A stretch of DNA of 64,000 nt, from positions 124,001 through 188,000 of the IMG/VR virus record IMGVR_UViG_3300042350_004191. The stretch is one strand, 5' to 3'. The notes beneath the pieces were generated by a model. That model made no database searches, was not told the DNA's origin, and worked only from the letters and a program-made list of their open reading frames with translations. Below are positions 6,391 to 27,236 of the stretch, piece by piece (position 1 is the stretch's first letter; the number at the start of each line of letters is the position of its first letter). A program made the position numbers and the translations under genes.

Positions 6391-6391
6391 A

Positions 6392-6868: not shown

Positions 6869-6869
6869 T

Positions 6870-9361: not shown

Positions 9362-9381
9362 AACTGTATTATAATATATTT
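9347..9381. promoter_or_regulatory. Bidirectional promoter with palindromic -10 (TATTATAATA)
   Basis: + strand TTGTAA(9347)-17-TATAAT(9370)-6-ATG(9382); - strand TATAAT(9373-9368)-6-ATG(9361). Confidence 0.7.
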
Positions 9382-9777
9382 ATGGATAATTTGTTCGAAG
9401 AGTATGAAAAAGAAATATTTTCTGATACAAAAATTGACGAATTAAATCTTTTAGAAAAACAATTACAGTTACCAGCCATAAAACATAAATGGGTTGCAAG
9501 ATTAATTACCCACAAAAGGAAAGTAAACAATCTTGAGAAAAAAAGAAAAGAGATTAAAGAAATAGTTTTATCTAAAATGAGCGATATCCCCAAAGGAATA
9601 CCAAAAAAATTATTAGATGCTAAAATTGACACAACCGAAGAGATTCAAAAGATAGACGAAGAAATAGAAAAACATAGTATAATGATAGAATATTTGGAAA
9701 AAGTTGAACAAATATTTAAATCTATGAGTTACGATCTTAAAAATATTATAGATATTAATAAATTAGAAACTACATGA
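9382..9777 (+). CDS. uvsY: UvsY-like recombination mediator
   Basis: 131-aa helical protein, D.KIDELNL...QLPAIKHKW...IEYLEKV...MSYDLKNIID; directly upstream of uvsW. Confidence 0.75.
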   Translation: MDNLFEEYEKEIFSDTKIDELNLLEKQLQLPAIKHKWVARLITHKRKVNNLEKKRKEIKEIVLSKMSDIPKGIPKKLLDAKIDTTEEIQKIDEEIEKHSIMIEYLEKVEQIFKSMSYDLKNIIDINKLETT

Positions 9778-11201
9778 TAAAAATTAAATTTAGCGGTAAA
9801 AAGAAAAACCTCCTGCAATTAGAAGGAGATCCTTCTTTTATAGCATTATTAAGAGAAAGATTTTCTGTTCAGAATCCAGCATATCGTAGCAATAATCCAT
9901 TTGTACAACCTAGATTATATTGTATAACTCCATCAGGTAAATTTGAGATAGGTCTTCTTAAAGAAATATCTAATGCAATAGCAAACGAAGGTTTTGGTGT
10001 AGAAATTGAAGACGATATTAAAAAAGTATTCAGTCCTATAAATGTTGAAACTTGTTTTAATTTAATTCCATTAAATATGGATTATAGAGATTATCAAGAA
10101 CAAGCAATTAAGCAAACTATTGCACATGGAAGGGGTGTTATTATTTTACCTACAGCAAGTGGTAAAACTTATGTTATGGCAGGATTGATTAAAAACATCA
10201 AACTTATGTTGAATAATCCAGATGCCAAAACTTTAGTATTAGTTCCTTCGATACAATTAGTGGAACAGACGTATAAAGATTTTTTAGATTACGGATTAAC
10301 TGATATAACAAAATGGTCTGGTAAAAATAAACCAGACTTTGAAAATTCTAAAATTATTATAGCTGGTACACAAATATTATTAAGCAAAACCACTGACTTA
10401 TCTATTCTATCACAAATTGACCTGTTCTTATGTGATGAGGTTCACGGAATTAGGAAAGGAAACAGTATTAATAAGATTTTTAATTTGTTAGATACACCAT
10501 ATACGTTTGGATTTACAGGCACAATGCCCCCTTCTCTCATAGATCAATGGAATATAATTGGAAAATTCGGACCCATAAATTATGAAGAAAAAACCAAAAC
10601 ATTAGAACAAAAAGATTATATTGCAACATTTAAGATCATAATTTTAAGAATAAAACACGATAGCTTACCATCACATATCGCAGTTCCTGATCGATCATTG
10701 GAGTCTTTTCAAAGAGAATTAGAATTTTTATTACAAAATAAAAAAAGAAATGAAATGATCTGTAATTTAGCTAATAAACTACAAAATAATACTATCATAA
10801 TGGTTGATAGAATTGACCATGGAGTAGTTTTGACTAATATACTGCGTAATATTACAAAAAGACCCCATTATTTCATTCAAGGATCTACAGAAATTGAAGA
10901 AAGAGAGAATATAAGAAAACTCATGAATGAAAAAAACGATGTAATTGTTGTGGCTATGTCAAAAATATTTAGTACGGGTATTAATATACCTAATTTACAT
11001 AATATAATTTTTGCTTCTGCTGGTAAAGCTAAAATTAAAATTATGCAATCTATTGGAAGAGCACTAAGACTACATCCCAATAAAAAAGTTGCAAATATCT
11101 TTGATATAAGCGATAATACAATATATAGTCGTAAACATTTAAAACAAAGATTAGACTTATATGATAAAGAAAATTATTTATATGAAATAAAAGACCTATG
11201 A
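9774..11201 (+). CDS. uvsW: UvsW SF2 DNA helicase
   Basis: RDYQ, PTASGKT, DEVH, GFTGT, FSTGINIPNL, QSIGRALR. Confidence 0.92.
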   Translation: MIKIKFSGKKKNLLQLEGDPSFIALLRERFSVQNPAYRSNNPFVQPRLYCITPSGKFEIGLLKEISNAIANEGFGVEIEDDIKKVFSPINVETCFNLIPLNMDYRDYQEQAIKQTIAHGRGVIILPTASGKTYVMAGLIKNIKLMLNNPDAKTLVLVPSIQLVEQTYKDFLDYGLTDITKWSGKNKPDFENSKIIIAGTQILLSKTTDLSILSQIDLFLCDEVHGIRKGNSINKIFNLLDTPYTFGFTGTMPPSLIDQWNIIGKFGPINYEEKTKTLEQKDYIATFKIIILRIKHDSLPSHIAVPDRSLESFQRELEFLLQNKKRNEMICNLANKLQNNTIIMVDRIDHGVVLTNILRNITKRPHYFIQGSTEIEERENIRKLMNEKNDVIVVAMSKIFSTGINIPNLHNIIFASAGKAKIKIMQSIGRALRLHPNKKVANIFDISDNTIYSRKHLKQRLDLYDKENYLYEIKDL

Positions 11202-11977
11202 AAAAGAAAACTAAAGACAAAACCCCTAAGAAAAAAAATATAATAAAAAAAACTATTAAAAAAAACATTTCTAAAAGCAAAGAACTCAACGAAGTTAAAA
11301 CAAAACCTATAGTAAATAAAAAACCAAAAAAAAGAAGAAGAAAATTAGAAGAAAACATAGACGAACTTGCGGAATATGAAGATCATCTTCTCACAGAAGA
11401 AGATTTTGAACAAGAATTAGAATTAAGTTTAAAAAAACGTCTTGGATATAGCGAAGAAGATGAATTAGAAGAAACAGAAGAAGTAGAAGAACCCGAAGAA
11501 GTAGAGGAAGTAGAAATTTTAGGGGTTCCTTATAAAAACAAAAGACCAAAGGTTCCAAAAGAAAAATTTTATGTTGATCCCAAACATTTTGATGATGAAA
11601 TTGTGAAATATTATGAATCTGGTGTTATATCAAATGATTTAGCTGAAATGGTTAGTAAGATTGCCAACAAATTAAGCTTTTCATCAAATTTTGCGGGTTA
11701 TACGTATAGAGAAGAAATGGTGGGAGATGGTATTGTTCGTATGTTTAAAGCACTAATGTCAAAAAAATACGACAGAGAAAAAGGAACCAACCCATTTTCT
11801 TACTTTACAAGAATCGCCTTCAATGCTTTTAGAAATAGAATTAAAAAAGAAAAACACATTCACGAAGCACAAGAAAGATATCAACAAGAATATATGATGG
11901 TATCCGAAGGATATACTAATTTACTAAAAAATAACCAAATTAGTATAACAAAAGATTTATTAGATAGATATGATTGA
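11198..11977 (+). CDS. 55: Late-transcription sigma factor gp55 with long charged N-terminal extension
   Basis: FYVD...KIANKLS...NFAGYTYREEMVGDG...NPFSYFTRIAFNAFRNRIKKEK; precedes gp47 as in T4-like phages. Confidence 0.88.
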   Translation: MKKKTKDKTPKKKNIIKKTIKKNISKSKELNEVKTKPIVNKKPKKRRRKLEENIDELAEYEDHLLTEEDFEQELELSLKKRLGYSEEDELEETEEVEEPEEVEEVEILGVPYKNKRPKVPKEKFYVDPKHFDDEIVKYYESGVISNDLAEMVSKIANKLSFSSNFAGYTYREEMVGDGIVRMFKALMSKKYDREKGTNPFSYFTRIAFNAFRNRIKKEKHIHEAQERYQQEYMMVSEGYTNLLKNNQISITKDLLDRYD

Positions 11978-13001
11978 TTGTGTTAATGCTAAAATAGGAA
12001 GTTTTTCTGATATTCATATAGGGTTATATCAAGATAACCCTATATGGCACGATATATCTTTAAAATTCGCAGAAAATGTATCAACCTTTTATAAAAAAGA
12101 AGGTATTAAAGACATAATCATACCTGGTGATATATTTCATAACAGATCAGAGATATCAGTAAGAACAATACATACTGCAAAACGTTTTTTTGACTATTTT
12201 AAAGATTTTAATATCATAATATCTGCTGGTAATCATGATTCTTTCTTAAAAGAAAAAGCAGAAATAAATTCTATATGTATATTTGATGGTTGGTCAAATA
12301 TAACTATTGTTGATAAACAACCCCATGTTATAGAAACATCTAACGGCACAACAATTTCGCTGGTACCATGGGGTACACCAGTAGAAAGCATCCCCCATAC
12401 CGATATATGTTTTGGTCATTTTGAAATTAATACGTTTTACATGAACACTTACAGAGCTTGTGAAAAGGGTGAAGACTCTACTAATTTATTAAGTAAAAGT
12501 CCGTTTATTATATCAGGCCATTTTCACAAAAAAGACCATAGAACGTATAAAAAAGGTCAAATTTTATACTTGGGAAGTCCATATCAACACAATTTTGGCG
12601 ATTATGGTGATGACAGAGGTTATTATATAATAAATTTGGATACTAAAACGTTTAATTATTATTCAAATACTTTTTCGCCTAAATTTATAAAAATTAACAA
12701 AGAAAATTTAGAAGAAAAAACAATTAAAAATGTTTTAGAAAATAATTTTGTACATTTATCTTTAGATTCGTCTGTTAAAAATGATGAAATTAATAAAATA
12801 ATAACTCAATTAAAAACATATAAACCGAATGATATAAAAATTGAATATCAAAACACAGAAGAAGAGAAAAACACAGAAAAAACTTACGATTCTATAGATA
12901 TATTAGAAAATATTTATGAATATGTTCAAACTTTAGATATTGAAAGCAAAAATGAAGTTGTTAATTATCTAACAGATGTGTATAATAGTATAAACAAATG
13001 A
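11970..13001 (+). CDS. 47: Recombination endonuclease subunit gp47 (Mre11/SbcD-like)
   Basis: SDIHIG, GDIFHNR, GNHD, GHFE, SGHFH, YLGSPY metallophosphoesterase motifs. Confidence 0.92.
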   Translation: MIDCVNAKIGSFSDIHIGLYQDNPIWHDISLKFAENVSTFYKKEGIKDIIIPGDIFHNRSEISVRTIHTAKRFFDYFKDFNIIISAGNHDSFLKEKAEINSICIFDGWSNITIVDKQPHVIETSNGTTISLVPWGTPVESIPHTDICFGHFEINTFYMNTYRACEKGEDSTNLLSKSPFIISGHFHKKDHRTYKKGQILYLGSPYQHNFGDYGDDRGYYIINLDTKTFNYYSNTFSPKFIKINKENLEEKTIKNVLENNFVHLSLDSSVKNDEINKIITQLKTYKPNDIKIEYQNTEEEKNTEKTYDSIDILENIYEYVQTLDIESKNEVVNYLTDVYNSINK

Positions 13002-13744
13002 AAACCGGAATTGGAATATTAGATCTATATGATGATGAAAGTCTTAAAGACCTTTTATCAAAGGTACCACAAGATGCTTATATATCAGTTATAAGCAATC
13101 GCAAAAATCCTTATAAACCAGAAGTAGACAATTATATAAGCGTAGGAGATTCGTCCTTGGCTAATATGAAAAATTTACTTTTATACGATTTTAGGATTAA
13201 AAATCTTGATTATTATTATTTAATACACACTGATCAAGTATTAAATGATGCCGATGATTTTAATAAAATTAAAAAGATTTCCGAAACTTTTGGAACATGG
13301 TTTTTAACTGGTAATATAGGAGATAAAACACTCGATATTGAAGATGATAATGGTTCAGTTTTAAAATTATCACAAAAATTAAACTCAAAATTTCTTTTTA
13401 CATTTAAAGGAATATTAAAAAATGTTGGATTCTTTGATGAAAGATTTATTAATACACAAAACTTAGATGTCTTGGATTATATTATTCGTTTAAAACAAAA
13501 AAACTTATATGTAGCAGATGGTTATTATCCAACAATTTCATTACCAATTGTTGAAAACAGAAAAACAATGAGCAATGCTTATATACAAGATTTTCCTAGT
13601 GAAGAAATGTCAGTAAGACATTCTTATGGGTTGTTTGTACATTTACACAAATACATTCCTAATCATAGTGATCCTCAACCTAAAAAAGAAGAAGAGGTTT
13701 TAAACTCTGTTGAAAATTTACAAAAAAATTATTCTAAAAAATAA
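12998..13744 (+). CDS. Divergent GT2-like glycosyltransferase
   Basis: KNVGFFDERF...LDYIIRL resembles the GT2 C-terminal motif of the next gene; DxD degenerate (HTD). Confidence 0.5.
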   Translation: MKTGIGILDLYDDESLKDLLSKVPQDAYISVISNRKNPYKPEVDNYISVGDSSLANMKNLLLYDFRIKNLDYYYLIHTDQVLNDADDFNKIKKISETFGTWFLTGNIGDKTLDIEDDNGSVLKLSQKLNSKFLFTFKGILKNVGFFDERFINTQNLDVLDYIIRLKQKNLYVADGYYPTISLPIVENRKTMSNAYIQDFPSEEMSVRHSYGLFVHLHKYIPNHSDPQPKKEEEVLNSVENLQKNYSKK

Positions 13745-13749
13745 ATTAT

Positions 13750-15186
13750 ATGATTTTCGTAGGTATAGTTACATGTAATCGACCAGATTATTTTAATAAA
13801 TGTTATGAGTCTGTTAAAAATGCTAATAACGTAGACGTTATTGCTGTATGTAATGACGGAAAAGACGAAGTTCTTTTAGACTCAAATTCTTTATACATAA
13901 AACATAAAGAAAATAAAGGTGTAGGTATTAGCAAAAATGATTTATTGAGGTTAGCATTGGAAAATCCTAAAATAGAACACATCTTTTTATTAGAAGATGA
14001 TATGATTGTCAAAGATCCTGATGTTTTTAATGTATATGTTAAAGCTGCTAAAAAATCAGGAATATATCATTTAAATTTTGGACCAGGATCTCCTTTTAAT
14101 AGAAAACAAAACTTTAATTTTGATTTACATAATAGACATTTGTGTAAAAATGATTCAGAATTAAATCCTAAGTTAAAAGTAGAGTATAGCGAAGACGTAG
14201 AAGTTTGGTTTTATGAGCATACGGTTGCTATGCTGTCTTATTTTCACAGGTCTGTATTAGAGGATGTAGGATTACACGATGAAAGGTTTTATAATGCATG
14301 GGAACATGTAGACTTAACATACAGAATAATAAAAGCAGGATATCATCCTCCTTTTTGGTGGTTTGCTGATGTTGCTAATAGCGATAAATTGATCGATGTT
14401 GCTCCTGAAGCTATAGAAAAAAGTTCAATTGCTAAAGATACCGAACAGTGGCAAAAAAATGTATATGGTGGTAGAGAAGTATATAAAGAAAAACATAATC
14501 ACTACCCAAACAACCCACCGTATCTTTCCAAAGAAGACGTTATACGTATAATTAAGCGTCTAAAAAGAAAGAGTGATCTTTTAGAAAAAGAAAAATCTAA
14601 TAATTTAACAGATAAGTTGCCAGATATATCTCAGATACCAGAAGAATTTGAAGAATTAATAAATGTTTATAAAACATTAAAACCTAAAAATGTATTAGAA
14701 ATTGGATCTTTGTTAGGTTGGTCTTTAAAAAGGTTTATTAAAAATGCAGAAGATAGTGCTAATATTATTTCTATCGATTATCCTGTAAGAGACTTTGTAG
14801 GACCCAATGATCAACGTGTTGACCAACAAGAGTATGGTCATATGATTCTTTGGAAAAAATGGGCTAAAGAAAAAAACATAAATTTGACAGTTTTACCTTA
14901 CTCGTCTTTTCAACAAAGCACACTTGAACAAGTAAAAAGTGTAACAAAAGAGTTAGATTTTCTTTTTATAGACGGAGATCATAGATATGAGGCAATAAAA
15001 AATGATTTTTATATGTATTATCCTTTAGTAAGGAAAGGAGGTATTATTGCTCTCCATGATATTGCAGAAAACGAAGAGGGTGGTGGTCATAAATTTTGGA
15101 ATGAGATAAAAAATAAATTTAAACACAAAGAATTTTTATTATCCGATAAAAAAGATAAAGGTATTGGAGTAGTATATGTCGAATAA
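13750..15186 (+). CDS. GT2 glycosyltransferase fused to class I SAM methyltransferase
   Basis: IVTCNRP, CNDG, LEDD, VGLHDERF...EHVDLTYR; C-terminal VLEIGS.LGWS, DFLFIDGDHRY, GGIIALHD. Confidence 0.85.
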   Translation: MIFVGIVTCNRPDYFNKCYESVKNANNVDVIAVCNDGKDEVLLDSNSLYIKHKENKGVGISKNDLLRLALENPKIEHIFLLEDDMIVKDPDVFNVYVKAAKKSGIYHLNFGPGSPFNRKQNFNFDLHNRHLCKNDSELNPKLKVEYSEDVEVWFYEHTVAMLSYFHRSVLEDVGLHDERFYNAWEHVDLTYRIIKAGYHPPFWWFADVANSDKLIDVAPEAIEKSSIAKDTEQWQKNVYGGREVYKEKHNHYPNNPPYLSKEDVIRIIKRLKRKSDLLEKEKSNNLTDKLPDISQIPEEFEELINVYKTLKPKNVLEIGSLLGWSLKRFIKNAEDSANIISIDYPVRDFVGPNDQRVDQQEYGHMILWKKWAKEKNINLTVLPYSSFQQSTLEQVKSVTKELDFLFIDGDHRYEAIKNDFYMYYPLVRKGGIIALHDIAENEEGGGHKFWNEIKNKFKHKEFLLSDKKDKGIGVVYVE

Positions 15187-16003
15187 TATAACATTTGTTA
15201 CACATTTAAGGTACGATAATCCAGACAGAATAAGCAATCTTCAAACAATGATTGATTATTACAGTCAAAATTTTCCAGAATCAAAATTTATTTTCGTGGA
15301 AGACGATTATGAACATAATAAAAATTTTGATAAAGTTAAATGGAAAAAAGGATCAACTTCTTATTATTTTTTAAAAAATACAGGGACATATCATAGAACC
15401 AAAGCATTAAATTATGGGTTTAATGAGGCAAAAACACCTATAGTTGTTTCCATGGATACTGATTGTATTGTTTCTAATAAATCTATATTAGAATGCGAAC
15501 AAGAATTGTTGAATGGTGCTACTGCCGCATGGCCTTATAATGGTTATTTTATCGATGTAGATTATAATCTAAAAAACTTCTTCACTCAAAATTCTTTAGA
15601 TTATAATATATTATTATCCAATCTTGATGGATGTTTAGAGTTGCCTATATGTGCATCTTACAAAAATTATTCTGTAAGGTGTACAAGTACAGTTCATTTA
15701 GGTGTAGGTGGAATTGTTATGTTCAACAAAGAACTATTTTTGAAAATAGGAGGTTACAATGAAAATTTTGTAGGTTGGGGCTGTGAAGATAATGAAGTAG
15801 AATATAGGTTAAAAACCTTGAATCAATTATATTATAGAGATAAAGATAAATCGTCTATATGTTTTCATTTATATCATGCACAAGCACAAAGGGCAGAGAA
15901 TCCATTCTATGATAGAAATGGTAAATTGTTAAACGAAATACAAGGAATGGATGAAGCTAATCTTTTGAAACATATATTAACTTGGAAAAATGATAACGTT
16001 TAG
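15176..16003 (+). CDS. GT-A glycosyltransferase (GT2 with GT7 C-terminal-like domain), putative galactosyltransferase
   Basis: RTKALNYG, MDTD (DxD), GGIVMF...IGGYNENFVGWGCEDNE...FHLYH. Confidence 0.82.
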   Translation: MSNNITFVTHLRYDNPDRISNLQTMIDYYSQNFPESKFIFVEDDYEHNKNFDKVKWKKGSTSYYFLKNTGTYHRTKALNYGFNEAKTPIVVSMDTDCIVSNKSILECEQELLNGATAAWPYNGYFIDVDYNLKNFFTQNSLDYNILLSNLDGCLELPICASYKNYSVRCTSTVHLGVGGIVMFNKELFLKIGGYNENFVGWGCEDNEVEYRLKTLNQLYYRDKDKSSICFHLYHAQAQRAENPFYDRNGKLLNEIQGMDEANLLKHILTWKNDNV

Positions 16004-16805
16004 AAATTTAGGAAAACATGGAGAATTCGGAAACCAGCTATTTCAAATAGCTGCTGTTATAGGTACTGCCATCAAAAACAATACAGTTTTTAATTTTCCG
16101 AAATGGCAAGGTTTAATATCTGGAACAGAGTATTCAACATATTTTAAAAATCCAATTCCAGAATCAGTAAACATTAATGACCATTTTGATGTTTATATGG
16201 AGCCATCTTTTTCGTATAACGAGATACCATATCAGATGAATCAAAAATTAGACTTGTTTGGTTATTTTCAAAGCGAAAAGTACTTCTTACACTGTAAAAA
16301 TGAAATTATAAATTTTTTCGAACCTTCAGAATTAATTTTTAAAAAAATAAAAAACTTAGATTATAAAAACTCTGTGAGTTTACAATTAAGGTTTTATGAT
16401 AATAAAAGACAATATTCAAATCACCTTGTTATGAACGATCCTTCGTATGGTGATTTATATTATACAGTTGAAGAGAATATTCCATATTTACAACAAGCTA
16501 TAAATTTTTTTGGGAAAGATAAAAATTATTTTGTAACTACAAATAACTTTGAAAAGGCTAAACAAATGTTTGGTGCTTATAGTAATTTTTATTTTTTGGA
16601 AAAATATTCATATTTAGAACAGTTTTTTATACAAAGTTTGTGCGAGCACAATATTATTACAAATTCGTCTTTTGGGTGGTGGGGTGCTTGGTTAAATAAA
16701 AATTTACATAAAATAGTTTTTGCGCCTTGCTTATGGTTTAAGCCAAATCATAAATCCAAAGAAGAAAGTAAAGATTTATATCCTGAAACTTGGAAAGTTT
16801 TATAA
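15990..16805 (+). CDS. GT11 alpha-1,2-fucosyltransferase-like protein
   Basis: GEFGNQLFQ, GYFQSEKYF, CEHNIITNSSFGWWGAWLN, DLYPETW; HxRRxD replaced by QLRFYD. Confidence 0.85.
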   Translation: MITFRNLGKHGEFGNQLFQIAAVIGTAIKNNTVFNFPKWQGLISGTEYSTYFKNPIPESVNINDHFDVYMEPSFSYNEIPYQMNQKLDLFGYFQSEKYFLHCKNEIINFFEPSELIFKKIKNLDYKNSVSLQLRFYDNKRQYSNHLVMNDPSYGDLYYTVEENIPYLQQAINFFGKDKNYFVTTNNFEKAKQMFGAYSNFYFLEKYSYLEQFFIQSLCEHNIITNSSFGWWGAWLNKNLHKIVFAPCLWFKPNHKSKEESKDLYPETWKVL

Positions 16806-17704
16806 TGAGAAGTTTAGTAACAGGTGGACAAGGATTTATTGGAAGCGTTTTAGTAAAAAAGCTACTAAACGAATGTAAAGATGATGTGATTGTTATTGAT
16901 AATAACAGTTCAAATAACAAAAATAATTTTAATGTTAAAGGAGCCAAATATTACAATGTAGATTTAAATAATTTTGACAAAATATTTCCTTTATTTAAAG
17001 ACGTTGACAGGGTATTTCATTTAGCAGCAGACGTTTCTATAGAGTTTTGTAATAAAAATCCCAGAATATCAGGTATTAATAACTCTAACATAACTCTTAA
17101 TACACTAGAATGTTGTCGATTAAATAAAGTTAAAAAATACATTTATTCGTCAACTTCTGCTGTATATGAACAAAAAAATACTAAATTGAAAGAAACCGAC
17201 AATGTTCGTCCTTTAAATTTATATTCAGCATCCAAATTATTTGGAGAAAATTTATGTAAAATATATTACGACCTTTATGGTGTAGAAACAATTTGTTTGC
17301 GCTATTTTAATGTTTTCGGTTCTTCAATGAAGAAAAGTCCATATTCTTCTGTTTTAGTTAATTTTTTAAATAATGAGTCAGAAAATAAACCATTAATTGT
17401 ACATGGTAATGGTAAACAAACAAGAGATTTTGTATTTGTTGAAGATGTAGCACAAGCAAACATCATAGCATCAACACTAAAATTGAAAAAATATGGTAAG
17501 ATTTACAATATAGGTTCTGGTAAAAGCATGTCTATAATAGACTTAGCAAAAAAAATTTCAAATAATATTACTTTTGTAAAATCACGAAGTGGTGATATAA
17601 AGAATAGTTGTTCTGATATTAAAAGATTAAAAAAAGACTTTAATTGGAAACCTGAAGTGAAAATTGAAAAATGGTTAAATAAAATAATTAAAACAAATGT
17701 ATAA
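16805..17704 (+). CDS. NAD-dependent nucleotide-sugar epimerase/dehydratase (extended SDR, GalE/WbpP-like)
   Basis: VTGGQGFIG, FHLAA, SSTSAVY, YSASK, LRYFNVFG, GNGKQTRDFVFVEDVA; TAATG coupling to GT11 gene. Confidence 0.9.
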   Translation: MRSLVTGGQGFIGSVLVKKLLNECKDDVIVIDNNSSNNKNNFNVKGAKYYNVDLNNFDKIFPLFKDVDRVFHLAADVSIEFCNKNPRISGINNSNITLNTLECCRLNKVKKYIYSSTSAVYEQKNTKLKETDNVRPLNLYSASKLFGENLCKIYYDLYGVETICLRYFNVFGSSMKKSPYSSVLVNFLNNESENKPLIVHGNGKQTRDFVFVEDVAQANIIASTLKLKKYGKIYNIGSGKSMSIIDLAKKISNNITFVKSRSGDIKNSCSDIKRLKKDFNWKPEVKIEKWLNKIIKTNV

Positions 17705-18380
17705 TATAGGTTTATTAATAATAGCGACAAATAAATACATAGATTTTTTAAATCCTTTAATAAAAAGTACAGATAATTATTTTTTAAAAAATCAAAATGT
17801 GAAATATTTTATCTTTACGGATAAAGATATTTCTTTTTTAAAAAGTGAAAGAGAAATTGTAAAAATTCAAACTGAACACAAAGACTGGCCTTGGATGACT
17901 TTAGGTAGATATAAAATTTTTTGTGATAGTAAAAATTTATTATCTAAAATGGATTATCTTTATTATTGTGATGTAGATATGAAATTTGTAGACGAGGTTG
18001 GTGACGAAATTTTAGAACAAATAGTAGCTACACAACATCCAGCTTTACGAGAAACAAGAGGAACTCCAGAAACTAACACAAGTTCTTTAGCGTGTGTTTA
18101 TCCTCACGAAAATATGGAATATTTTGCTGGTGGATTTAATGGCGGTTCTGCTGAACAATTTTTAAAAATGTCTAGTATTTTGTCTAAAAATATAGAAATC
18201 GATTATTTAAATGGAATTATTGCTTTGTGGCATGATGAAAGTCATTTAAATAGATATTTAATAGATAATCCTCCTACAAAAATATTAAGTCCAAGTTATT
18301 GTTACGGGGAAAACATGGAACTACCTTTCCCTAAAAAAATTCTAGCTTTAGACAAAAATCATTTTAAAATAAGATCATGA
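17697..18380 (+). CDS. GT6 alpha-1,3-glycosyltransferase (ABO-transferase family)
   Basis: IATNKY, YFIFTD, YCDVDMKF (DxD), YFAGGFNGG, ALWHDESHLNRYL, KILSPSY. Confidence 0.92.
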   Translation: MYNIGLLIIATNKYIDFLNPLIKSTDNYFLKNQNVKYFIFTDKDISFLKSEREIVKIQTEHKDWPWMTLGRYKIFCDSKNLLSKMDYLYYCDVDMKFVDEVGDEILEQIVATQHPALRETRGTPETNTSSLACVYPHENMEYFAGGFNGGSAEQFLKMSSILSKNIEIDYLNGIIALWHDESHLNRYLIDNPPTKILSPSYCYGENMELPFPKKILALDKNHFKIRS

Positions 18381-19039
18381 AAAAAGGAGTTATACTATAC
18401 CATAACAACATACAAAAATTGTATGATAATAGATGGATTGATAAATGTATACATTCCATGGTAAATCAAACGGATAATGATTTTACTTTTTATGAATTAA
18501 ATTATAACGGAGATTCTAATTCAGTTGTTAAAAACAATTCACAAAAATTAAAATTTTGGTCAAAAAAAATGTCAAATTATGCAGAAGCTATGAATTTTTT
18601 ATTGGATAAATCGTTTAATGATGGGTGTGATTATGTTTTTAATACAAACTTGGACGATTATTATGCATTAAACAGAATATCATCACAATTAGATATGATG
18701 TTAGAACAAGATTTAGATATAGTGAGTAGCGATTTTTCTTACATACAAGAAAGAAAAGAAAATGGTATTTCAGAAGATGTCGTAATTTTATTTAAAAATA
18801 TTGAAAAAAATAATATTAAAGACAATTTAATGAAAAGACATAATGTTATTGCTCATCCATCCGTTTGTTATAATAAAAGATTTTGGTTAGATAATAATAA
18901 CAGATATGATATTAATAAGGTTCCGCAAGAAGATCTAGACTTATGGATTCGCTCAATAAATAATGGTTATAAGTTTGGAATACATGAAAAAGTGTTATTG
19001 TATTATAGAATACATGAAAAACAAAGCAGTCAATCATGA
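18377..19039 (+). CDS. GT2-family glycosyltransferase
   Basis: CIHSMVNQT, NLDDY...RISSQL, IAHPSV, EDLDLWIR, LLYYRIH. Confidence 0.8.
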   Translation: MKKGVILYHNNIQKLYDNRWIDKCIHSMVNQTDNDFTFYELNYNGDSNSVVKNNSQKLKFWSKKMSNYAEAMNFLLDKSFNDGCDYVFNTNLDDYYALNRISSQLDMMLEQDLDIVSSDFSYIQERKENGISEDVVILFKNIEKNNIKDNLMKRHNVIAHPSVCYNKRFWLDNNNRYDINKVPQEDLDLWIRSINNGYKFGIHEKVLLYYRIHEKQSSQS

Positions 19040-19707
19040 ATATATACAATTTTATCGAAAGTAATATAAACAAAAATTCAATTTTTTTTGAAATAGGATC
19101 TCATTTTGGTTCGGATACTCAAAAATTTTCTAAAATAACAAACAAATTACATTGTTTTGAACCAGATCCTAGAAATATAAAAATTTTTAAACATTTGAAT
19201 TCAAATGTACAATTAAACGAGTTTGCAATTTCTGATAAAGACGGTGTATCACAATTTTTTCTTTCTAGTGGCAATGTGTACGAATCAATGTATGGACCTA
19301 CAGAAAATGAATTAATAAACCAAAACGATTGGTCAGCCTCTTCGTCATTAATTTCTCCTAAAAATCATTTTAAAAAAACACCATGGGTTAAATTTGATAA
19401 TACTATAGAAGTCAAAACAAAACGCCTAGATACATATTGTATAGAAAACGATATTAACAATATAGATTTTCTTTGGATGGACGTTCAAGGAGCAGAACTA
19501 AGCGTTATAAAAAGTATGGGAGCCTTCAAAGATAAAATACATTACATTTATACAGAATACAGCAATGAAGAATTGTATGAAAACCAAGGAACTAAAGAAC
19601 AAATTATAGAATTATTGGGCAATTCTTGGAAAGTTTTGTGTGATTTTGGAGGCGATATTTTATTAGAAAACCAAAATTATGATATCAATTACAATACCAG
19701 CATATGA
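19036..19707 (+). CDS. FkbM-family methyltransferase
   Basis: FEIGSHFG, FEPDPRN, AISD, TKRLD, IDFLWMDVQGAEL, IYTE. Confidence 0.88.
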   Translation: MNIYNFIESNINKNSIFFEIGSHFGSDTQKFSKITNKLHCFEPDPRNIKIFKHLNSNVQLNEFAISDKDGVSQFFLSSGNVYESMYGPTENELINQNDWSASSSLISPKNHFKKTPWVKFDNTIEVKTKRLDTYCIENDINNIDFLWMDVQGAELSVIKSMGAFKDKIHYIYTEYSNEELYENQGTKEQIIELLGNSWKVLCDFGGDILLENQNYDINYNTSI

Positions 19708-20350
19708 AATGTGTGGAGTTGGTAGTTCTTTTTTAGAAAAAAATTTACAATTTTTAAGAGATCAAACTTTTAAAAATTTTGAAGTAGTTATATCAGATCA
19801 TAGTATTTCCGATGATATAAAAAATGTTTGTTCTTTATTTAAAGACTTGGACATAAAATATATTAGAAATGAAAAAGATCGTGGAAGTTCTTCGGCTAAT
19901 TTAAACAATGCAATACTTAATTCAAAATATGATATTATTAAATTTTTAATGCAAGACGAATATATTTTTGAGAAAAATACTCTGTTGGATATTAAAAATG
20001 CTTTTCAAAGTGAAAATGTTAATTGGGTTGCTGTAGGTTTTTATAATGGAAATATAGAAGACAAAAGAATACCTTATTATAATGATGCAGTTATATATGG
20101 AAACAATACAATCGGAAGTCCTAGTATTGTTTCCATAAGAAAAACCAAAGATTTAGAGTTATTTAATCCTGAATTGATATGGTTAATGGATTGTGATTAT
20201 TATAAGAGAATTTACAATAAATGGGGTCATCCATTTATTGTAAAAGATTATAAAATTTTCATAAATCACCACCAAAATCAAGTTACTAATATTATAGATA
20301 ATATAAGAAAAGAAAAAGAACATGTTTTTTTAAAAACAATATATAAATAA
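19679..20350 (+). CDS. GT2-family glycosyltransferase
   Basis: ISITIPAYE, QTFKNFEVVISDHS, NLNNAI, FLMQDE, IGSPS, LMDCDYY. Confidence 0.85.
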   Translation: MISITIPAYEMCGVGSSFLEKNLQFLRDQTFKNFEVVISDHSISDDIKNVCSLFKDLDIKYIRNEKDRGSSSANLNNAILNSKYDIIKFLMQDEYIFEKNTLLDIKNAFQSENVNWVAVGFYNGNIEDKRIPYYNDAVIYGNNTIGSPSIVSIRKTKDLELFNPELIWLMDCDYYKRIYNKWGHPFIVKDYKIFINHHQNQVTNIIDNIRKEKEHVFLKTIYK

Positions 20351-20355
20351 GCGAT

Positions 20356-20952
20356 ATGACAAGAACACAGATAATAAACGGATTAATTAAAAAAAATAAC
20401 TATAAAAGTTATTTAGAGATCGGTGTTAATACACCTGAACAACCTGGATATAACTGGTCCAGTGTACAAATAGATTTAAAACACGGTGTTGATCCATTTG
20501 TAGACACGACATTTAAAACTACATCTGATGATTTTTTTAAAAATTACATAAATCAAAAATATGATATTATTTTTGTAGATGGGTTACATTTGTTTGAACA
20601 AGCATATAAAGATATAATAAATTCTTTAAATAATTTAAACGAAAATGGGACTATTGTAGTTCATGACTGTAATCCAATTACTGAAATAACACAACGAAGG
20701 ATCAGGGAATCGAATGAATGGCATGGTGATGTTTGGAAAGCTATTTTAAAGTTAAGATTAGAAAATCCCGATGTTGATATTTCCACAGTAAATGCTGATG
20801 AGGGGTGTGCTATCATTAAAAAAGGTCAACAAACACTATTAGAAGTATCGGAAAATATAGCTGAAGTCTATGATTATTCTTTTTTAGAAAAAAATAGAAA
20901 TAAAATATTAAATTTGATATCTACTGATGAATTTATAAAAAAATATCTTTAA
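20356..20952 (+). CDS. Class I SAM-dependent methyltransferase (Methyltransf_24-like)
   Basis: YLEIGV, GVDP, TSDDFF, YDIIFVDGLH, GTIVVHDCNP, WHGDVWK. Confidence 0.85.
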   Translation: MTRTQIINGLIKKNNYKSYLEIGVNTPEQPGYNWSSVQIDLKHGVDPFVDTTFKTTSDDFFKNYINQKYDIIFVDGLHLFEQAYKDIINSLNNLNENGTIVVHDCNPITEITQRRIRESNEWHGDVWKAILKLRLENPDVDISTVNADEGCAIIKKGQQTLLEVSENIAEVYDYSFLEKNRNKILNLISTDEFIKKYL

Positions 20953-20985
20953 TTTTTTAAAAAATCTGATATAATAATTTGTTTA

Positions 20986-22785
20986 ATGAAAAAAATTCAA
21001 TTTAAACACCTTTTTATACAAAATTTTTTATCTGTAGGTGAAGAAAAATTGCATATTAATTTTGATAGTGGTGTTAATTTCATAACAGGTATAAACAAGG
21101 ATAAAAACAGCAAAAATGGGTGCGGTAAAACTACTATTTTAGATGCTTTATATTGGTGTATATTTGGAAATACTATAAGAGACATTAAAAAAGATAAAAT
21201 TATTCATAATCACTCAGATGTTAGATGTAAAGTTGTATTAGAATTTGATCTTATTAATAATAATACCGAATCTTATAAAATAGAAAGAACTATTAATCCT
21301 AGTAAAGTCCATTTATACAAAAAACAAGAGGATACAACATATTCTACTATACAAAAAACAGATGAAGCTATTAAAAATTTATTAGGAGCTAATGAGGAAC
21401 TGTTTAGAAATTCTGTAATAATGTCATTGGATAATACCTTACCTTTCATGGCACAAAAAAAGGTAGAAAAAAGAAAATTTATTGAAGGAATTCTTCAGAT
21501 TAATATTTTTAGTGAAATGTTATCTAAAGTTAGACAGGATTATAACGAATCTAAAAAAACTCATGAAATAAATACAAATACATTTATTGAAAAACAAAAA
21601 ATGTTAAAATTTTTAGAAGATCAAAAAGAAAAAAACGAACAGAATAAAAAAGAAAAAATAAAATCCATCAATAATAAAATTAAAGAAAACATAGAAAAAA
21701 TAAAAAACAATAAAACGGAAAATTTTGATGAAAAATTAAAAAAATTTAAAGATTCTTTAACTAAAACTGAAAATATTGCAAGTAAAATAGATGAAAAAGT
21801 TGAAAACTCAAGAAATTCCATTTTAGAAGAAACAAAGAAAGAGTCTAAAATTCAAGCGGAGATTGAAAGTTTAGAAAAACAAATCAAATCTTTGCAAAAT
21901 AAAACAGGAACATGTCCCACTTGTAAAAGAAAATTAATTGAAGAAGATGATAATTCTATAAATTCACATATCGAGAAGATAAAGATCGATATTAAAGAAA
22001 AAGAACAACAACACAACTCGATTCTTTCAGTTAAAAACAAAATTAATCTAGAAAAAAATACTTTTATATCAAAAAAAGATGAATTAGTAAAAATTATTAA
22101 AGAAATTAATTTAAAAATTACAGCTTTACAGACTTTATCAAAAGAATCACAAACATTAAAAGACAGAAATGAAGAATTGTTGGTTGAAATAGAAAATATT
22201 AAAAATCAAAAAGACGAAATTAGCGAAAAATATGAAGAAATTAAAAAAGAAATATTAAACTTAGAGAAAAATATAGAAGAACAAATTAAAAATTTAACAA
22301 TTTTAGAAAATTGTAAGTCTATTGTTTCTGAAGAGGGTGTTAAAACTTATATAGTCAAAAAACTTCTGGTTTTATTTAATAATAAATTAAATTTATATCT
22401 TAAAAAGTTAGAAGCACCATGTAATTGTATTTTTGATGAGTACTTTGATGAAATTATAACTAATGAATCAGGGAAAGAGTGTTCGTACTTTAACTTTAGT
22501 GGTGGAGAAAGGAAAAGAATAGACTTAGCCATACTCTTCACATTTCAAGACATTTTAAAATCACAAACAGGAATACATTATTCACTCAGTATGTACGATG
22601 AACTATTTGATTCTGCATTAGATGATGCTGGTTCTGCTAAAGTGTTGGAAATTTTAAAAGAAAATACAGAAAAACATCAAGAATCTGTTTATATTATATC
22701 TCATAGTTCTTCCATCAATAAAAATGATGTTAATAAAGTTATTGAATTAGAAAAAATTAACGGCCAAACCAAGATAGTTAATTGA
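20986..22785 (+). CDS. 46: Recombination endonuclease subunit gp46 (Rad50/SbcC-like ATPase)
   Basis: NFLSVG, NGCGKTT, coiled coil with CPTC zinc hook, FSGGE, YDELFD, ISH. Confidence 0.93.
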   Translation: MKKIQFKHLFIQNFLSVGEEKLHINFDSGVNFITGINKDKNSKNGCGKTTILDALYWCIFGNTIRDIKKDKIIHNHSDVRCKVVLEFDLINNNTESYKIERTINPSKVHLYKKQEDTTYSTIQKTDEAIKNLLGANEELFRNSVIMSLDNTLPFMAQKKVEKRKFIEGILQINIFSEMLSKVRQDYNESKKTHEINTNTFIEKQKMLKFLEDQKEKNEQNKKEKIKSINNKIKENIEKIKNNKTENFDEKLKKFKDSLTKTENIASKIDEKVENSRNSILEETKKESKIQAEIESLEKQIKSLQNKTGTCPTCKRKLIEEDDNSINSHIEKIKIDIKEKEQQHNSILSVKNKINLEKNTFISKKDELVKIIKEINLKITALQTLSKESQTLKDRNEELLVEIENIKNQKDEISEKYEEIKKEILNLEKNIEEQIKNLTILENCKSIVSEEGVKTYIVKKLLVLFNNKLNLYLKKLEAPCNCIFDEYFDEIITNESGKECSYFNFSGGERKRIDLAILFTFQDILKSQTGIHYSLSMYDELFDSALDDAGSAKVLEILKENTEKHQESVYIISHSSSINKNDVNKVIELEKINGQTKIVN

Positions 22786-22809
22786 TTTTTAGTATTTTAG
22801 TGATATAAT
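22782..22809 (+). promoter_or_regulatory. Sigma70-type promoter
   Basis: TTGATT-16-TATAAT with TG extension, 11 nt before ATG 22821. Confidence 0.6.
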
Positions 22810-22820
22810 ATTATACAAAC

Positions 22821-24125: not shown

Positions 24126-24132
24126 GCCAATC

Positions 24133-26706: not shown

Positions 26707-26709
26707 TAC

Positions 26710-26737
26710 TTGAAAAAGAAATAGACTGTGATAATAT
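26710..26737 (+). promoter_or_regulatory. Sigma70-type promoter
   Basis: TTGAAA-16-TAATAT, 7 nt before ATG 26745. Confidence 0.6.
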
Positions 26738-26744
26738 ATTAAAT

Positions 26745-27152: not shown

Positions 27153-27168
27153 ACAAAATTAAAACAAG

Positions 27169-27201: not shown

Positions 27202-27202
27202 A

Positions 27203-27230: not shown

Positions 27231-27236
27231 AATTCT

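What the first reader, a model, noticed from the sequence alone, without database searches (positions are those of the whole stretch)
12998..20952. Ten-gene soluble glycan-assembly island with blood-group-A-like enzyme logic, inserted between gp47 and gp46
Seen: ten tightly coupled genes encoding seven GT domains (GT2-like x4, GT2/GT7C, GT11, GT6), one SDR epimerase and three SAM methyltransferase domains. They split the normally neighbouring gp47/gp46 pair. None has an evident signal peptide or TM segment, and there is no flippase, polymerase or initiating transferase in the window. Known: GT11 makes Fuc-alpha1,2-Gal (H antigen), GT6 adds alpha1,3-Gal/GalNAc to it, and GalE/WbpP epimerases supply the donor; GT6 and GT11 genes are known individually in cyanophage P-SSM2. 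Inference: the adjacent order GalT-like, GT11, epimerase, GT6 is a coherent route to an A/B-antigen-like, O-methylated glycan on a cytoplasmic acceptor. Candidates are virion proteins (shielding), phage DNA (anti-restriction) or host lipid-linked O-antigen (receptor masking).
Basis: partly seen in the sequence, partly recalled or inferred. Interest (0 to 1): 0.85.

Follow-up and report, generated by a model that had tools for sequence, protein, structure and literature searches.

The report
Swappable sugar-chain gene cassette in phage
An uncultured T4-like water phage carries ten co-transcribed genes for building a methylated, probably blood-group-A-like sugar chain; the cluster is real and is swapped between related phages, but it belongs to a kind known in marine phages since 2005 whose target molecule is still unknown.

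Summary
Ten overlapping or nearly abutting + strand genes (12998-20952) lie between gp47 (SbcD) and gp46 (Rad50/SbcC). They encode seven GT-A-type glycosyltransferase domains, one SDR 4-epimerase-like enzyme and three SAM methyltransferase domains. None has a membrane segment. In about 35 distant relatives gp47 and gp46 are 5-12 bp apart.

The GT6 keeps DXD, the catalytic Glu, small donor-pocket residues and the small residue that admits a 2'-fucose. It belongs to the DXD "minimal" clade, whose one assayed member makes A antigen on fucosylated acceptors only. The block GT7C-like/GT11/epimerase/GT6 is inherited as a unit in five lineages. However, the GT11 has a non-canonical donor motif, the window has no GDP-fucose genes, and the epimerase substrate is unresolved.

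"Soluble, so the acceptor is cytoplasmic" does not follow, because LPS/LOS transferases are also soluble.

Novelty is modest. Epimerase-GT11-GT6 triads are annotated in many cultured cyanophages, and in P-SSM2 these genes sit in one cluster.

New here:
- The gp47/gp46 gap is a fixed hot spot where glycan cassettes are exchanged.
- A conserved GT-B transferase lies just after gp46.

The acceptor remains open. I favour host envelope glycolipid (0.4) over virion protein (0.3) and DNA (0.07).

The parts
11970..13001 (+). gp47 (SbcD-like nuclease subunit), left flank. Its stop overlaps the g1 start by 4 nt.
   Evidence: phrog_100 1e-66; junction
12998..13744 (+). g1: GT-A-fold protein of an unclassified family. 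It is the first gene after gp47 in all close relatives.
   Evidence: No Pfam/PHROG/NCBIfam/PDB sequence hit. 96 homologues, all unannotated. AF2 pLDDT 92.5. Foldseek matches GT-A GTs, TMq 0.42-0.56. Weak similarity to the g2 N-terminus.
13750..15186 (+). g2: fusion of a GT2-like glycosyltransferase (about residues 1-265) with a Methyltransf_24/CmcI-like O-methyltransferase (about 294-443). It is split into two genes in L008, L172 and L174.
   Evidence: Pfam; PHROG 2456/1579; split forms
15176..16003 (+). g3: GT-A transferase with a Glyco_transf_7C / GT2_2 C-terminal subdomain (GWGCEDNE motif). First gene of the conserved four-gene module.
   Evidence: Pfam 1.1e-12; weak beta-4-GalT1 and chondroitin synthase hits over residues 177-243; sequence
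15990..16805 (+). g4: divergent GT11-type (alpha-1,2-fucosyltransferase family) protein. The N-terminal GNQLFQ and C-terminal NSSFGWWGAW motifs are kept. The HxRRGDY motif is replaced by QLRFYD.
   Evidence: Pfam PF01531 36.5 bits (cut-off 23.9); PHROG 2644 6.5e-39; alignment; variant conserved in orthologues
16805..17704 (+). g5: extended-SDR nucleotide-sugar 4-epimerase-like enzyme (GxxGxxG at 7-13, YxxxK at 140-144). The ATG at 16805 was used by public gene calls. The mechanical ORF starts at TTG 16790.
   Evidence: Pfam Epimerase 9.6e-51; best solved relative 6dnt, 2e-47; GalE model 150 bits against cut-off 262; motifs; gene call
17697..18380 (+). g6: GT6 retaining transferase of the DXD 'minimal catalytic domain' clade.
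   Evidence: Pfam 5.1e-42; human ABO transferase 3.8e-37 with residue mapping; phage alignment
18377..19039 (+). g7: GT2-family glycosyltransferase
   Evidence: Pfam sub-threshold; many of 309 homologues carry PF00535
19036..19707 (+). g8: FkbM-family SAM methyltransferase
   Evidence: Pfam 1.2e-18; TIGR01444 1e-21, above cut-off; 33% identical to P-SSM2 PSSM2_267
19679..20350 (+). g9: GT2 glycosyltransferase
   Evidence: Pfam PF00535 9.5e-12
20356..20952 (+). g10: Methyltransf_24 SAM methyltransferase. In the 91-96% identical relative L170 it is replaced by an unrelated methyltransferase on the opposite strand.
   Evidence: Pfam 1e-9; L170
20986..22785 (+). gp46 (Rad50/SbcC-like ATPase), right flank
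   Evidence: AAA_23, SMC_N, Rad50 zinc hook; cyanophage gp46 at 28% identity
22821..24125 (+). post46: GT-B-fold, GT4-like glycosyltransferase. It is conserved in all 54 relatives, including those without an island.
   Evidence: phrog_7162 7.7e-18; AF2 pLDDT 86; Foldseek MshA/BshA/PimB' 2e-10; viral GT group 1; conservation

Best explanation
The region is a phage-borne glycan-assembly cassette. It is transcribed together with the recombination and replication genes. It sits at a fixed hot spot (the gp47/gp46 gap), where related phages carry different, exchangeable sets of glycosyltransferases and methyltransferases.

Proposed order of action within the cassette:
- The conserved 5' GT-A enzymes (g1, g2) act first on the acceptor.
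- The inherited module g3-g4-g5-g6 adds a hexose (g3).
- g4, a GT11-type enzyme, adds a sugar that is probably fucose.
- g6, a GT6 enzyme, then adds an alpha-1,3 HexNAc, probably GalNAc made from UDP-GlcNAc by g5. The result is an A-antigen-like epitope.
- g7 and g9 add further sugars.
- The three methyltransferase domains O-methylate the chain.

Most likely acceptor (inferred, not shown): a host envelope glycolipid at the cytoplasmic face of the inner membrane. This could be lipid A-core (LOS-type assembly) or an undecaprenyl-linked unit, exported by host machinery.

Proposed benefit: infected cells change their surface glycan, which masks receptors against superinfection and against loss of progeny on cell debris.

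Status of the steps. Shown: gene content, coupling, modular inheritance, cassette exchange and the GT6 active-site features. Inferred: the sugars, the order of steps, the acceptor and the benefit.
For: - Domain content and tight coupling.
- The only + strand terminator-like site in the scanned stretch (9000-27500) lies at 27167, downstream of the polymerase gene.
- The hot spot is real: the gp47-gp46 gap is 5-12 bp in one clade and 4.2-9.6 kb in the other.
- At least a dozen different cassette architectures occur among about 30 loci, all glycan-related (GT25, GT10, GT47, GT8, PF03407, FUT8-like, Gmd, DegT, C- and O-methyltransferases).
- Cassette type does not follow flank similarity. L168 is closer in its flanks but has a different cassette, while L173 is more distant but has the same module.
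- The module g3-g6 is kept in order in the window, L170, L172, L173 and L008.
- GT6 residues and the assay of a clade member (PMC3516806).
- GT11-GT6 adjacency in cyanophages and bacteria.
- The enzyme families are those of LPS/LOS loci. The literature reads such phage clusters as host surface modification (PMC9602691; PMC7029224; PMC12801897).
- The cassette lies in the early/middle-type replication module and is not adjacent to any structural gene: the nearest are a tail-fibre-like ORF about 7.6 kb upstream (129-5384) and the opposite-strand structural block about 15 kb downstream.
- None of 209 ORFs in 21 related islands is a multi-TM protein. This fits dependence on host export, or LOS-type assembly that needs none.
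Against: - No experiment on any phage shows that such clusters alter host LPS. The host of this phage is unknown.
- The first transferases (g1, g2-like) are conserved across the phage lineage, which would fit a conserved phage-encoded acceptor just as well.
- The phage GT6 lacks the C-terminal membrane-binding domain of the LPS-making Bacteroides GT6 (PMC3516806).
- The GT11 donor motif is non-canonical, and the window has no GDP-fucose genes.
- In L008 the GT6 has lost its catalytic segment.
- A strictly lytic phage has only hours to profit from surface remodelling.
Confidence: 0.4

Rival explanations
1. Virion glycosylation. The soluble enzymes decorate phage structural proteins (capsid, tail or fibres) in the cytoplasm with a methyl-capped, A-antigen-like glycan. 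The exchangeable cassettes would then give phage 'serotypes'.
For: - All ten proteins are soluble, and no export gene occurs in any of 21 related islands.
- The first transferases are conserved in the phage lineage while the distal ones vary, as expected for a conserved phage acceptor.
- The phage GT6 lacks a membrane-binding domain (PMC3516806).
- Virion glycosylation by phage-encoded GTs is proven in mycobacteriophages (Freeman 2023, cited).
- From my own knowledge, chloroviruses and mimiviruses glycosylate capsid or fibrils with their own soluble GTs, including GT-methyltransferase fusions that resemble g2.
- A 1751-aa tail-fibre-like gene lies 7.6 kb upstream.
Against: - The cassette sits in the replication/recombination operon, not with the structural genes.
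- No glycosylated T4-like virion is on record in the papers searched.
- No acceptor motif could be identified.
- The enzyme families are typical of LPS loci.
Confidence: 0.3
2. DNA hypermodification. The transferases build a glycan on a modified base of the phage DNA as anti-restriction armour, possibly starting from the conserved GT-B enzyme next to gp46.
For: - The cassette lies inside the DNA metabolism operon.
- A conserved GT-B transferase sits between gp46 and the DNA polymerase, with weak fold matches to phage DNA alpha-glucosyltransferases.
- Phage GT-A and GT-B enzymes related to LPS enzymes put mono- to trisaccharides on 5hmC (Pyle et al.).
- From memory, T4 keeps its alpha-glucosyltransferase gene between genes 55 and 47.
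Against: - No thymidylate-synthase-like hydroxymethylase, TET-like dioxygenase or C5-methyltransferase was found among the roughly 45 window ORFs scanned.
- Seven to eight transferases plus three methyltransferases far exceed any known DNA glycan.
- GT6 and GT11 act on Gal-terminated glycans.
- About 146 kb of the genome was not seen.
Confidence: 0.07
3. Another acceptor. The cassette makes a free or small-molecule-linked oligosaccharide, or glycosylates a host protein (for example S-layer, pilin or flagellin) to redirect host physiology.
For: - The enzymes are soluble, and no carrier or export genes are present.
- The closest fold matches of the neighbouring GT-B enzyme are small-molecule transferases (MshA, BshA).
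- The nearest cellular GT6 relatives are in Dependentiae and Chlamydiae, mostly without LPS-type neighbours.
Against: There is no positive evidence. Hypervariable cassettes point to an exposed, selected surface structure rather than a metabolite.
Confidence: 0.13
4. Decaying cargo. The island is a passenger acquired by horizontal transfer and no longer functional as a pathway.
For: The GT6 of L008 has lost about 26 residues, including the catalytic Glu. The GT11 motif I is degenerate.
Against: - All ten ORFs are intact and translationally coupled.
- Orthologues are kept at 62-95% identity across five lineages, including the variant GT11 motif.
- GC content equals that of the flanks.
- The catalytic motifs of g5 and g6 are intact.
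Confidence: 0.03

Closest known systems
'LPS / cell-wall' gene clusters of large T4-like cyanophages (P-SSM2 PSSM2_257-271; S-SSM7, S-SCSM1, S-SCSM2R; epimerase-GT11-GT6 triads in S-CAM9, S-PRM1, S-8S55, B3, DSL-LC02)
   Same: - T4-like myovirus.
- A co-oriented cluster of soluble GT2/GT11/GT6/GT25/GT10 enzymes with SDR epimerases and FkbM-type methyltransferases.
- Four of the ten genes have P-SSM2 counterparts (GT11 27%, FkbM 33%, GT6 47%, epimerase 40%).
- GT11 and GT6 are directly adjacent in several isolates.
- The function is unknown there too.
   Different: - A different, uncultured lineage: DNA polymerase about 30% and gp46 28% identical to cyanophages.
- The cassette is inserted between gp47 and gp46 rather than in the distal hypervariable region.
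- There are no nucleotide-sugar de novo genes such as Gmd.
- It has three methyltransferase domains and a variant GT11 motif.
Bacterial blood-group-mimicking O-antigen/LOS loci (E. coli O86 wbnI/wbnK; Bacteroides ovatus GT6a)
   Same: A GT11-type and a GT6 enzyme are encoded side by side with an epimerase. GT6 active-site residues are equivalent (PMC3516806). GT11 lies within 8 kb of GT6 in 20 of 80 cellular loci.
   Different: - The bacterial loci sit with wzx/wzy/initiating transferase genes or use LOS assembly in their own cell.
- Bacteroides-type GT6 is metal-independent (NXN) and has a membrane-binding tail. This one is DXD and minimal.
- The details of E. coli O86 are from my own knowledge and were not tested here.
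DXD 'minimal' GT6 clade (cyanophage P-SSM2 GT6, Parachlamydia PaGT6)
   Same: About 227 aa catalytic domain only, with DVD, WHDES and the Ala-Gly-Gly donor pocket. PaGT6 is a metal-dependent GalNAc transferase that needs a 2'-fucosylated acceptor. The nearest cellular relatives are Dependentiae and Chlamydiae.
   Different: No enzyme of phage origin has been assayed. Identity to the nearest cellular relatives is only about 54%.
Virus-encoded virion glycosylation (mycobacteriophages Che8/Corndog/Myrna; chlorovirus and mimivirus clusters)
   Same: Soluble viral transferases with no use of host secretory glycosylation, methylated sugars, GT-methyltransferase fusions, and clusters that vary between relatives (partly from my own knowledge; Freeman 2023 cited).
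   Different: There the genes lie next to structural genes and the glycan on the virion is demonstrated. Here neither is the case.
Phage DNA sugar-hypermodification gene clusters (Pyle et al. 2023/2024)
   Same: LPS-like GT-A and GT-B enzymes near DNA replication genes.
   Different: Those clusters contain a 5mC dioxygenase or a thymidylate-synthase-like enzyme and add one to three sugars. No such enzyme was found in the window, and this cluster has seven to eight transferases.

Membership tests
CAZy GT6 (g6) | Match to the family profile above the curated threshold | tested here: met
   PF03414 144 bits against cut-off 25; human ABO transferases 3.8e-37 over residues 3-226
CAZy GT6 (g6) | Metal-binding DXD motif and catalytic Glu (GTA E303) | tested here: met
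   DVD aligned to GTA D211-V-D213, and WHDES aligned to W300-E303. Both are invariant in phage homologues except the L008 deletion.
CAZy GT6, A-synthase-like specificity (g6) | Small residues at GTA 266/268 (HexNAc donor) and a small residue at the position that admits the 2'-fucose (GTA Ala343; Trp in alpha-3GalT) | tested here: met
   Ala-Gly-Gly at 266-268 and Ala at the 343 equivalent. The rule comes from PMC3516806 and from established GTA/GTB work. Asp326 is not conserved (Gly-Glu instead).
CAZy GT6, A-synthase-like specificity (g6) | Transfer of GalNAc to a Fuc-alpha-1,2-Gal acceptor | not testable with these tools
   Only the clade member PaGT6 has been assayed.
CAZy GT11 alpha-1,2-fucosyltransferase (g4) | Match to the family profile above threshold | tested here: met
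   PF01531 36.5 bits against cut-off 23.9, covering only residues 158-268. Full-length match to phrog_2644.
CAZy GT11 alpha-1,2-fucosyltransferase (g4) | Motif I HxRRGDY (GDP-fucose binding) | tested here: not met
   QLRFYDN in the window, L008, L170, L172 and L173. The first Arg and the Asp are kept. The motif is canonical in clade-B homologues and in P-SSM2.
CAZy GT11 alpha-1,2-fucosyltransferase (g4) | N-terminal GNQ(L/M)FQ motif and C-terminal SxFSWW motif | tested here: met
   GNQLFQ and NSSFGWWGAW
CAZy GT11 alpha-1,2-fucosyltransferase (g4) | Supply of GDP-L-fucose (Gmd/Fcl) | tested here: not met
   No Gmd/Fcl homologue in the 64 kb window. Gmd is present in other cassettes (L009). The host or the unseen 146 kb may supply it.
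UDP-hexose/HexNAc 4-epimerase, GalE/WbpP type (g5) | Extended SDR with GxxGxxG and YxxxK | tested here: met
   Motifs at residues 7-13 and 140-144; PF01370 9.6e-51
UDP-hexose/HexNAc 4-epimerase, GalE/WbpP type (g5) | Equivalog-level match to a characterised 4-epimerase | tested here: inconclusive
   GalE model 150 bits against cut-off 262. The best solved relatives are 6dnt (which I recall as a UDP-GlcNAc 4-epimerase; the tool lists it only as 'NAD-dependent epimerase/dehydratase'), Pal, and 6zl6 (recalled as a UDP-GlcA 4-epimerase; listed only as 'Epimerase domain-containing protein'). WbpP and WbgU score lower.
Self-sufficient Wzx/Wzy-dependent O-antigen locus | Initiating phosphoglycosyltransferase, flippase and polymerase (multi-TM proteins) | tested here: not met
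   No TM segment in g1-g10 and no multi-TM ORF of that size in the window. None among 209 ORFs of 21 related islands.
Cyanophage-type 'LPS' auxiliary gene cluster | Cluster of GTs, nucleotide-sugar epimerase and methyltransferases in a T4-like myovirus, sharing orthologues with P-SSM2 | tested here: met
   T4-like core genes; shared GT11, FkbM, GT6 and epimerase
Phage virion glycosylation system | Glycan demonstrated on capsid or tail proteins; GT genes adjoining structural genes | tested here: not met
   The gene position is in the replication module. The presence of a glycan is not testable here.
Phage DNA sugar-hypermodification cluster | Neighbouring enzyme that makes a hydroxylated base (ThyS-like hydroxymethylase or 5mYOX plus C5-MTase) | tested here: not met
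   None among the window ORFs scanned. Only an N6/N4 MTase at 61602-62729. The rest of the 210 kb genome was not seen.

The most novel reading that the evidence does not exclude
The gp47/gp46 cassette, perhaps together with the conserved GT-B enzyme after gp46, is a self-contained system by which T4-like freshwater phages glycosylate their own particles (or, less likely, their DNA) with methyl-capped, ABO-like glycans. Exchange of cassettes between relatives would then create phage 'serotypes', a viral counterpart of bacterial O-antigen variation.
Probability: 0.3. Interest if true: 0.8.

Novelty: new member of a known kind. Interest (0 to 1): 0.42.

Why it matters
What the 'LPS genes' of aquatic T4-like phages act on has been an open question since P-SSM2 was sequenced in 2005.

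This locus adds three useful facts:
- A four-gene module (GT7C-like, GT11-type, epimerase, GT6) is inherited as a unit. It is small enough to reconstitute in E. coli.
- The glycan cassettes sit at one fixed site and are exchanged between relatives like serotype loci. This argues for selection on an exposed structure.
- A conserved GT-B transferase lies next to the site.

If the target proved to be the virion or the DNA, it would extend virus-encoded glycosylation to abundant environmental myoviruses. If it is host LPS, it would document receptor editing by lytic phages. As it stands, the finding is a well-supported new example, not a new kind of system.

Tried and rejected
- Nucleotide search of the region against 50,697 phage records found nothing. 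The lineage has no close cultured relative: gp46 is 28% and the polymerase about 30% identical to cyanophages.
- The sigma-70 promoter scan gave no more sites than shuffled sequence (120 against 122.8), so it says nothing about internal promoters.
- The T4 late motif TATAAATA is rarer than chance in the window (9 against 16.5). I did not use it to time expression.
- There are no tRNA genes in the window that could hint at the host.
- g1, g4 and post46 have no sequence-level match in the PDB. Fold prediction was needed for g1 and post46.
- I looked for population variants of the island to estimate selection. All six other assemblies are 100% identical, so there is no information.
- I checked whether the folE2-like gene at 32559 is part of a recognisable 7-deazaguanine operon. 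Its neighbours have no Pfam hits, so I left this open.
- PHROG labels of 'DNA methyltransferase' for g10 and the g2 C-terminus were not adopted. The Pfam matches are to Methyltransf_24/CmcI/O-methyltransferase families.
- I considered a recent transfer from a host and rejected it. The island GC (0.25-0.30) equals that of the flanks, and orthologues diverge in step with the flanks in L008 and L170.

Full report
**What is there.** The window is part of a 210,586 bp viral contig (IMGVR_UViG_3300042350_004191). The phage is T4-like. Its genes include UvsY, UvsW, a gp55-like sigma factor, gp47, gp46, a family B DNA polymerase, UvsX, a gp41-type helicase, gp32, large terminase, tail sheath, tail tube and neck protein. 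It has no close cultured relative. A megablast of the region found nothing. The best protein identities in the phage collection are 28% for gp46 and about 30% for the polymerase, both to cyanophages.

Between gp47 (11970-13001) and gp46 (20986-22785) lie ten + strand ORFs. Their junctions are overlaps of 4-29 nt or gaps of 5 nt. In the scanned stretch (9000-27500) the only + strand terminator-like site is at 27167, downstream of the polymerase gene. The island is therefore most simply read as part of one long replication/recombination transcription unit. GC content does not differ from the flanks. The same DNA, 100% identical, occurs in six other assemblies from different samples, including one NCBI MAG. 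It is not an assembly chimera.

**Domain content.**
- g2: a GT2-like domain fused to a Methyltransf_24/CmcI-like methyltransferase.
- g3: Glyco_transf_7C/GT2_2.
- g4: GT11.
- g5: an extended SDR epimerase with intact GxxGxxG and YxxxK motifs.
- g6: GT6 (5e-42).
- g8: FkbM methyltransferase.
- g9: GT2.
- g10: Methyltransf_24.
- g7: below the Pfam threshold itself, but many of its 309 homologues carry PF00535.
- g1: no sequence-family match at all, and 96 unannotated homologues on large phage contigs. A confident model (pLDDT 92.5) matches GT-A glycosyltransferases such as EXT2, mimivirus R699, WrtF and B4GALNT1 with moderate TM-scores. g1 is also weakly similar to the N-terminus of g2.

So seven GT-A-type domains, one epimerase and three methyltransferase domains is a fair count.

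None of the ten proteins has a hydrophobic segment. No ORF in the window looks like a flippase, polymerase, ligase or initiating phosphoglycosyltransferase.

The 434-aa protein directly after gp46 (22821-24125) is a GT-B-fold, GT4-like transferase (pLDDT 86). Its matches include MshA, BshA and PimB' at 2e-10 and viral 'glycosyl transferases group 1'.

**The split of gp47/gp46 and the nature of the site.** A scan of IMG/VR with gp46 gave 80 loci. They fall into two groups:
- In about 35 loci, whose polymerase is about 38% identical to the window's, gp47 and gp46 are 5-12 bp apart.
- In the loci with polymerase about 47% identical, and in the close relatives (72-76%), the two genes are separated by 4.2-9.6 kb.

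The gap is therefore an old, lineage-wide insertion site. Its content is always glycan-related but differs strongly between loci:
- L008 has the same ten genes plus a GT10 alpha-1,3-fucosyltransferase-like gene.
- L009 has g1, a g2-like GT, DUF5672, GDP-mannose dehydratase, a sugar C-methyltransferase and FkbM.
- L011 has g1, g2, two GT25 genes, DUF3431 and two Methyltransf_24 genes.
- L168 has GT47, PF03407, a GT8-like gene and four methyltransferases.
- L174 and L175 have GT47, PF03407, GT11 or FUT8-like, and GT25.
- The more distant clade has a GT2-like first gene, canonical GT11, GT10-like, GT7C-like, DegT aminotransferase, SDR, a HAD/kinase/RpiB cassette and Methyltransf_24.

None of 209 ORFs from 21 such islands is a multi-TM protein. 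Cassette type does not follow flank similarity. L168 is closer to the window in uvsW, gp47 and gp46 than L172, L173 or L008, yet it has a different cassette. L173 is more distant and has g3-g6 at 69-75% identity. Even the 91-96% identical relative L170 has exchanged g10 for an unrelated methyltransferase on the other strand.

The pattern has three parts: conserved first transferases (g1 and the g2-like GT), variable distal transferases, and several methyltransferases. It is the pattern of a serotype-like locus under diversifying selection.

**The 'blood-group-A logic'.** The GT6 aligns with human GTA/GTB over its whole length.
- It keeps the DVD metal site, the His233 equivalent, and the WHDES segment with the catalytic Glu.
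- It has Ala-Gly-Gly where GTA has Leu-Gly-Gly and GTB has Met-Gly-Ala.
- It has Ala at the position (GTA Ala343, Trp in alpha-3GalT) that decides whether a 2'-fucose fits (rule from PMC3516806).
- These residues are invariant in the phage homologues examined.

The literature places the cyanophage P-SSM2 enzyme and Parachlamydia PaGT6 in a clade of minimal, DXD-type GT6. [quoted passage not shown] The nearest cellular relatives of g6 are indeed Dependentiae and Chlamydiae, at about 54% identity. This is good indirect support for a GalNAc-transferring, fucose-requiring enzyme.

Genomic coupling is also strong:
- GT11 is directly adjacent to GT6, with an epimerase next to it, in S-CAM9, S-8S55 and S-PRM1.
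- GT11 and GT6 are adjacent in B3 and DSL-LC02, and close together in ACG-2014f and P-SSM2.
- A GT11 homologue lies within 8 kb in 20 of 80 cellular GT6 loci, often abutting.
- The block g3-g4-g5-g6 is kept in the same order in the window, L170, L172, L173 and L008.

Four weaknesses remain:
- g4 and all its orthologues in this module have QLRFYD in place of the HxRRGDY motif that is canonical in the distant clade and in P-SSM2. The flanking GT11 motifs are kept. The variant is conserved and so presumably functional, but the donor cannot be taken for granted.
- The window contains no Gmd or Fcl.
- g5 is below the GalE equivalog cut-off. Its best solved relatives are 6dnt, which I recall as an archaeal UDP-GlcNAc 4-epimerase, Pal, and 6zl6, which I recall as a UDP-GlcA 4-epimerase. 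The tool output itself does not name those activities.
- g3 resembles beta-4-galactosyltransferase only over its C-terminal subdomain.

In L008 the GT6 has lost about 26 residues, including WHDES, in frame.

**The acceptor.** That inference is weak. Bacterial O-unit and LOS transferases are themselves TM-less and act at the inner face of the membrane. LOS-type extension of lipid A-core needs none of the missing functions, and a phage can rely on host export (established knowledge).

The three candidate acceptors compare as follows:
- Host envelope glycolipid. The enzyme families are those of LPS/LOS loci (GT25, GT10, GT11, GT6, GT8, CmcI-like methyltransferases). The cassette is co-transcribed with early/middle-type genes, away from the structural module. 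The published reading of such clusters also points this way.
- Virion glycosylation. The first transferases are conserved within the phage lineage. The phage GT6 lacks the membrane-binding tail of the Bacteroides enzyme. There are precedents in mycobacteriophages (cited) and, from my own knowledge, in chloroviruses and mimiviruses.
- DNA. The position in the DNA-metabolism operon, the neighbouring conserved GT-B enzyme and recent work on DNA glycans speak for it. However, no enzyme that makes a hydroxylated base was found in the ORFs scanned, and the number of transferases is far beyond any DNA glycan known.

I commit to host envelope glycolipid as the most likely acceptor at 0.4, virion protein at 0.3, another acceptor at 0.13, DNA at 0.07 and decay at 0.03.

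**Comparison with what is known, and novelty.** Clusters of GT2/GT10/GT11/GT25/GT6 enzymes with epimerases are well known in large T4-like cyanophages and in pelagimyophages. In P-SSM2 the GT11, an FkbM-like gene, GT6 and an epimerase lie within 4 kb of each other.

Four points are new here:
- The lineage itself.
- The fixed gp47/gp46 insertion site.
- The evidence for cassette exchange and for a conserved four-gene module.
- The variant GT11 motif and the conserved GT-B neighbour.

I file it as a new member of a known kind, with moderate interest. The open question, which molecule is glycosylated, is not answered by sequence. It is better attacked in the cultured cyanophages that carry the same triad.

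Noticed in passing
window 22821-24125 (+): A 434-aa protein directly after gp46 is a GT-B-fold, GT4-like glycosyltransferase. It is conserved in all 54 related loci, including those where gp47 and gp46 are adjacent. Its acceptor is unknown. It has weak fold matches to phage DNA alpha-glucosyltransferases.
   Followed up: partly
window 32559-33428 (+): A FolE2-type GTP cyclohydrolase I gene lies right after gp32. Such genes can feed 7-deazaguanine (preQ0) DNA modification or folate synthesis. The five ORFs downstream (33433-36090) have no Pfam match.
   Followed up: partly
L008:5491-6093: The GT6 orthologue of the only IMG/VR relative with all ten genes has an in-frame loss of about 26 residues, including the catalytic WHDES segment. 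The rest of the island is intact there.
   Followed up: partly
L170:17360-17986 (-): In a relative 91-96% identical across the flanks and g1-g4, g6 and g7 (g5, g8 and g9: 86-88%), g10 is replaced by an unrelated class I SAM methyltransferase on the opposite strand. The last methylation step is swapped even between near-identical phages.
   Followed up: partly
LR745206.1 (L001) and LR756502.1; P0111: The closest GT6 in the phage collection (61-64% identical) is in two 635-642 kb megaphage genomes. A g7 homologue lies on a 629,742 bp contig. Glycan genes appear to be shared between this T4-like lineage and megaphages.
   Followed up: no
L088-L167 (genome contigs): The nearest cellular relatives of the phage GT6 (about 45-55% identical) are mostly in Dependentiae and Chlamydiae, which are intracellular symbionts of protists. 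Most have no GT11 nearby. In free-living bacteria (Bacteroidota, Moorena, Rhizobiaceae) GT11 usually abuts GT6.
   Followed up: partly
window 129-5384 (+), 5875-7568 (+): A 1751-aa ORF with a phage tail collar domain (a tail-fibre-like protein) is followed by two small membrane proteins and a PG_binding/Peptidase_M15 endolysin. This lies 7.6 kb upstream of the island. In relatives the big ORF carries a Peptidase_S74 chaperone domain.
   Followed up: no
window 20342-20349 (+); 41267, 47212, 59833 (-): TATAAATA occurs less often than chance in the window overall. Where it does occur, it often sits 5-8 nt before the start codon of a structural gene, and once sits just before g10.
   Followed up: no
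L084 (NCBI GCA_043537205.1, contig JBFDGW010000300.1, 139,654 bp): A 139 kb contig identical to this phage is deposited inside a bacterial MAG. This may be a binning artefact or a hint to the host. The organism name was not available to me.
   Followed up: no
window 61602-62729 (+): An ORF with an N6/N4 DNA methylase domain is the only DNA-modification enzyme recognised in the window.
   Followed up: no
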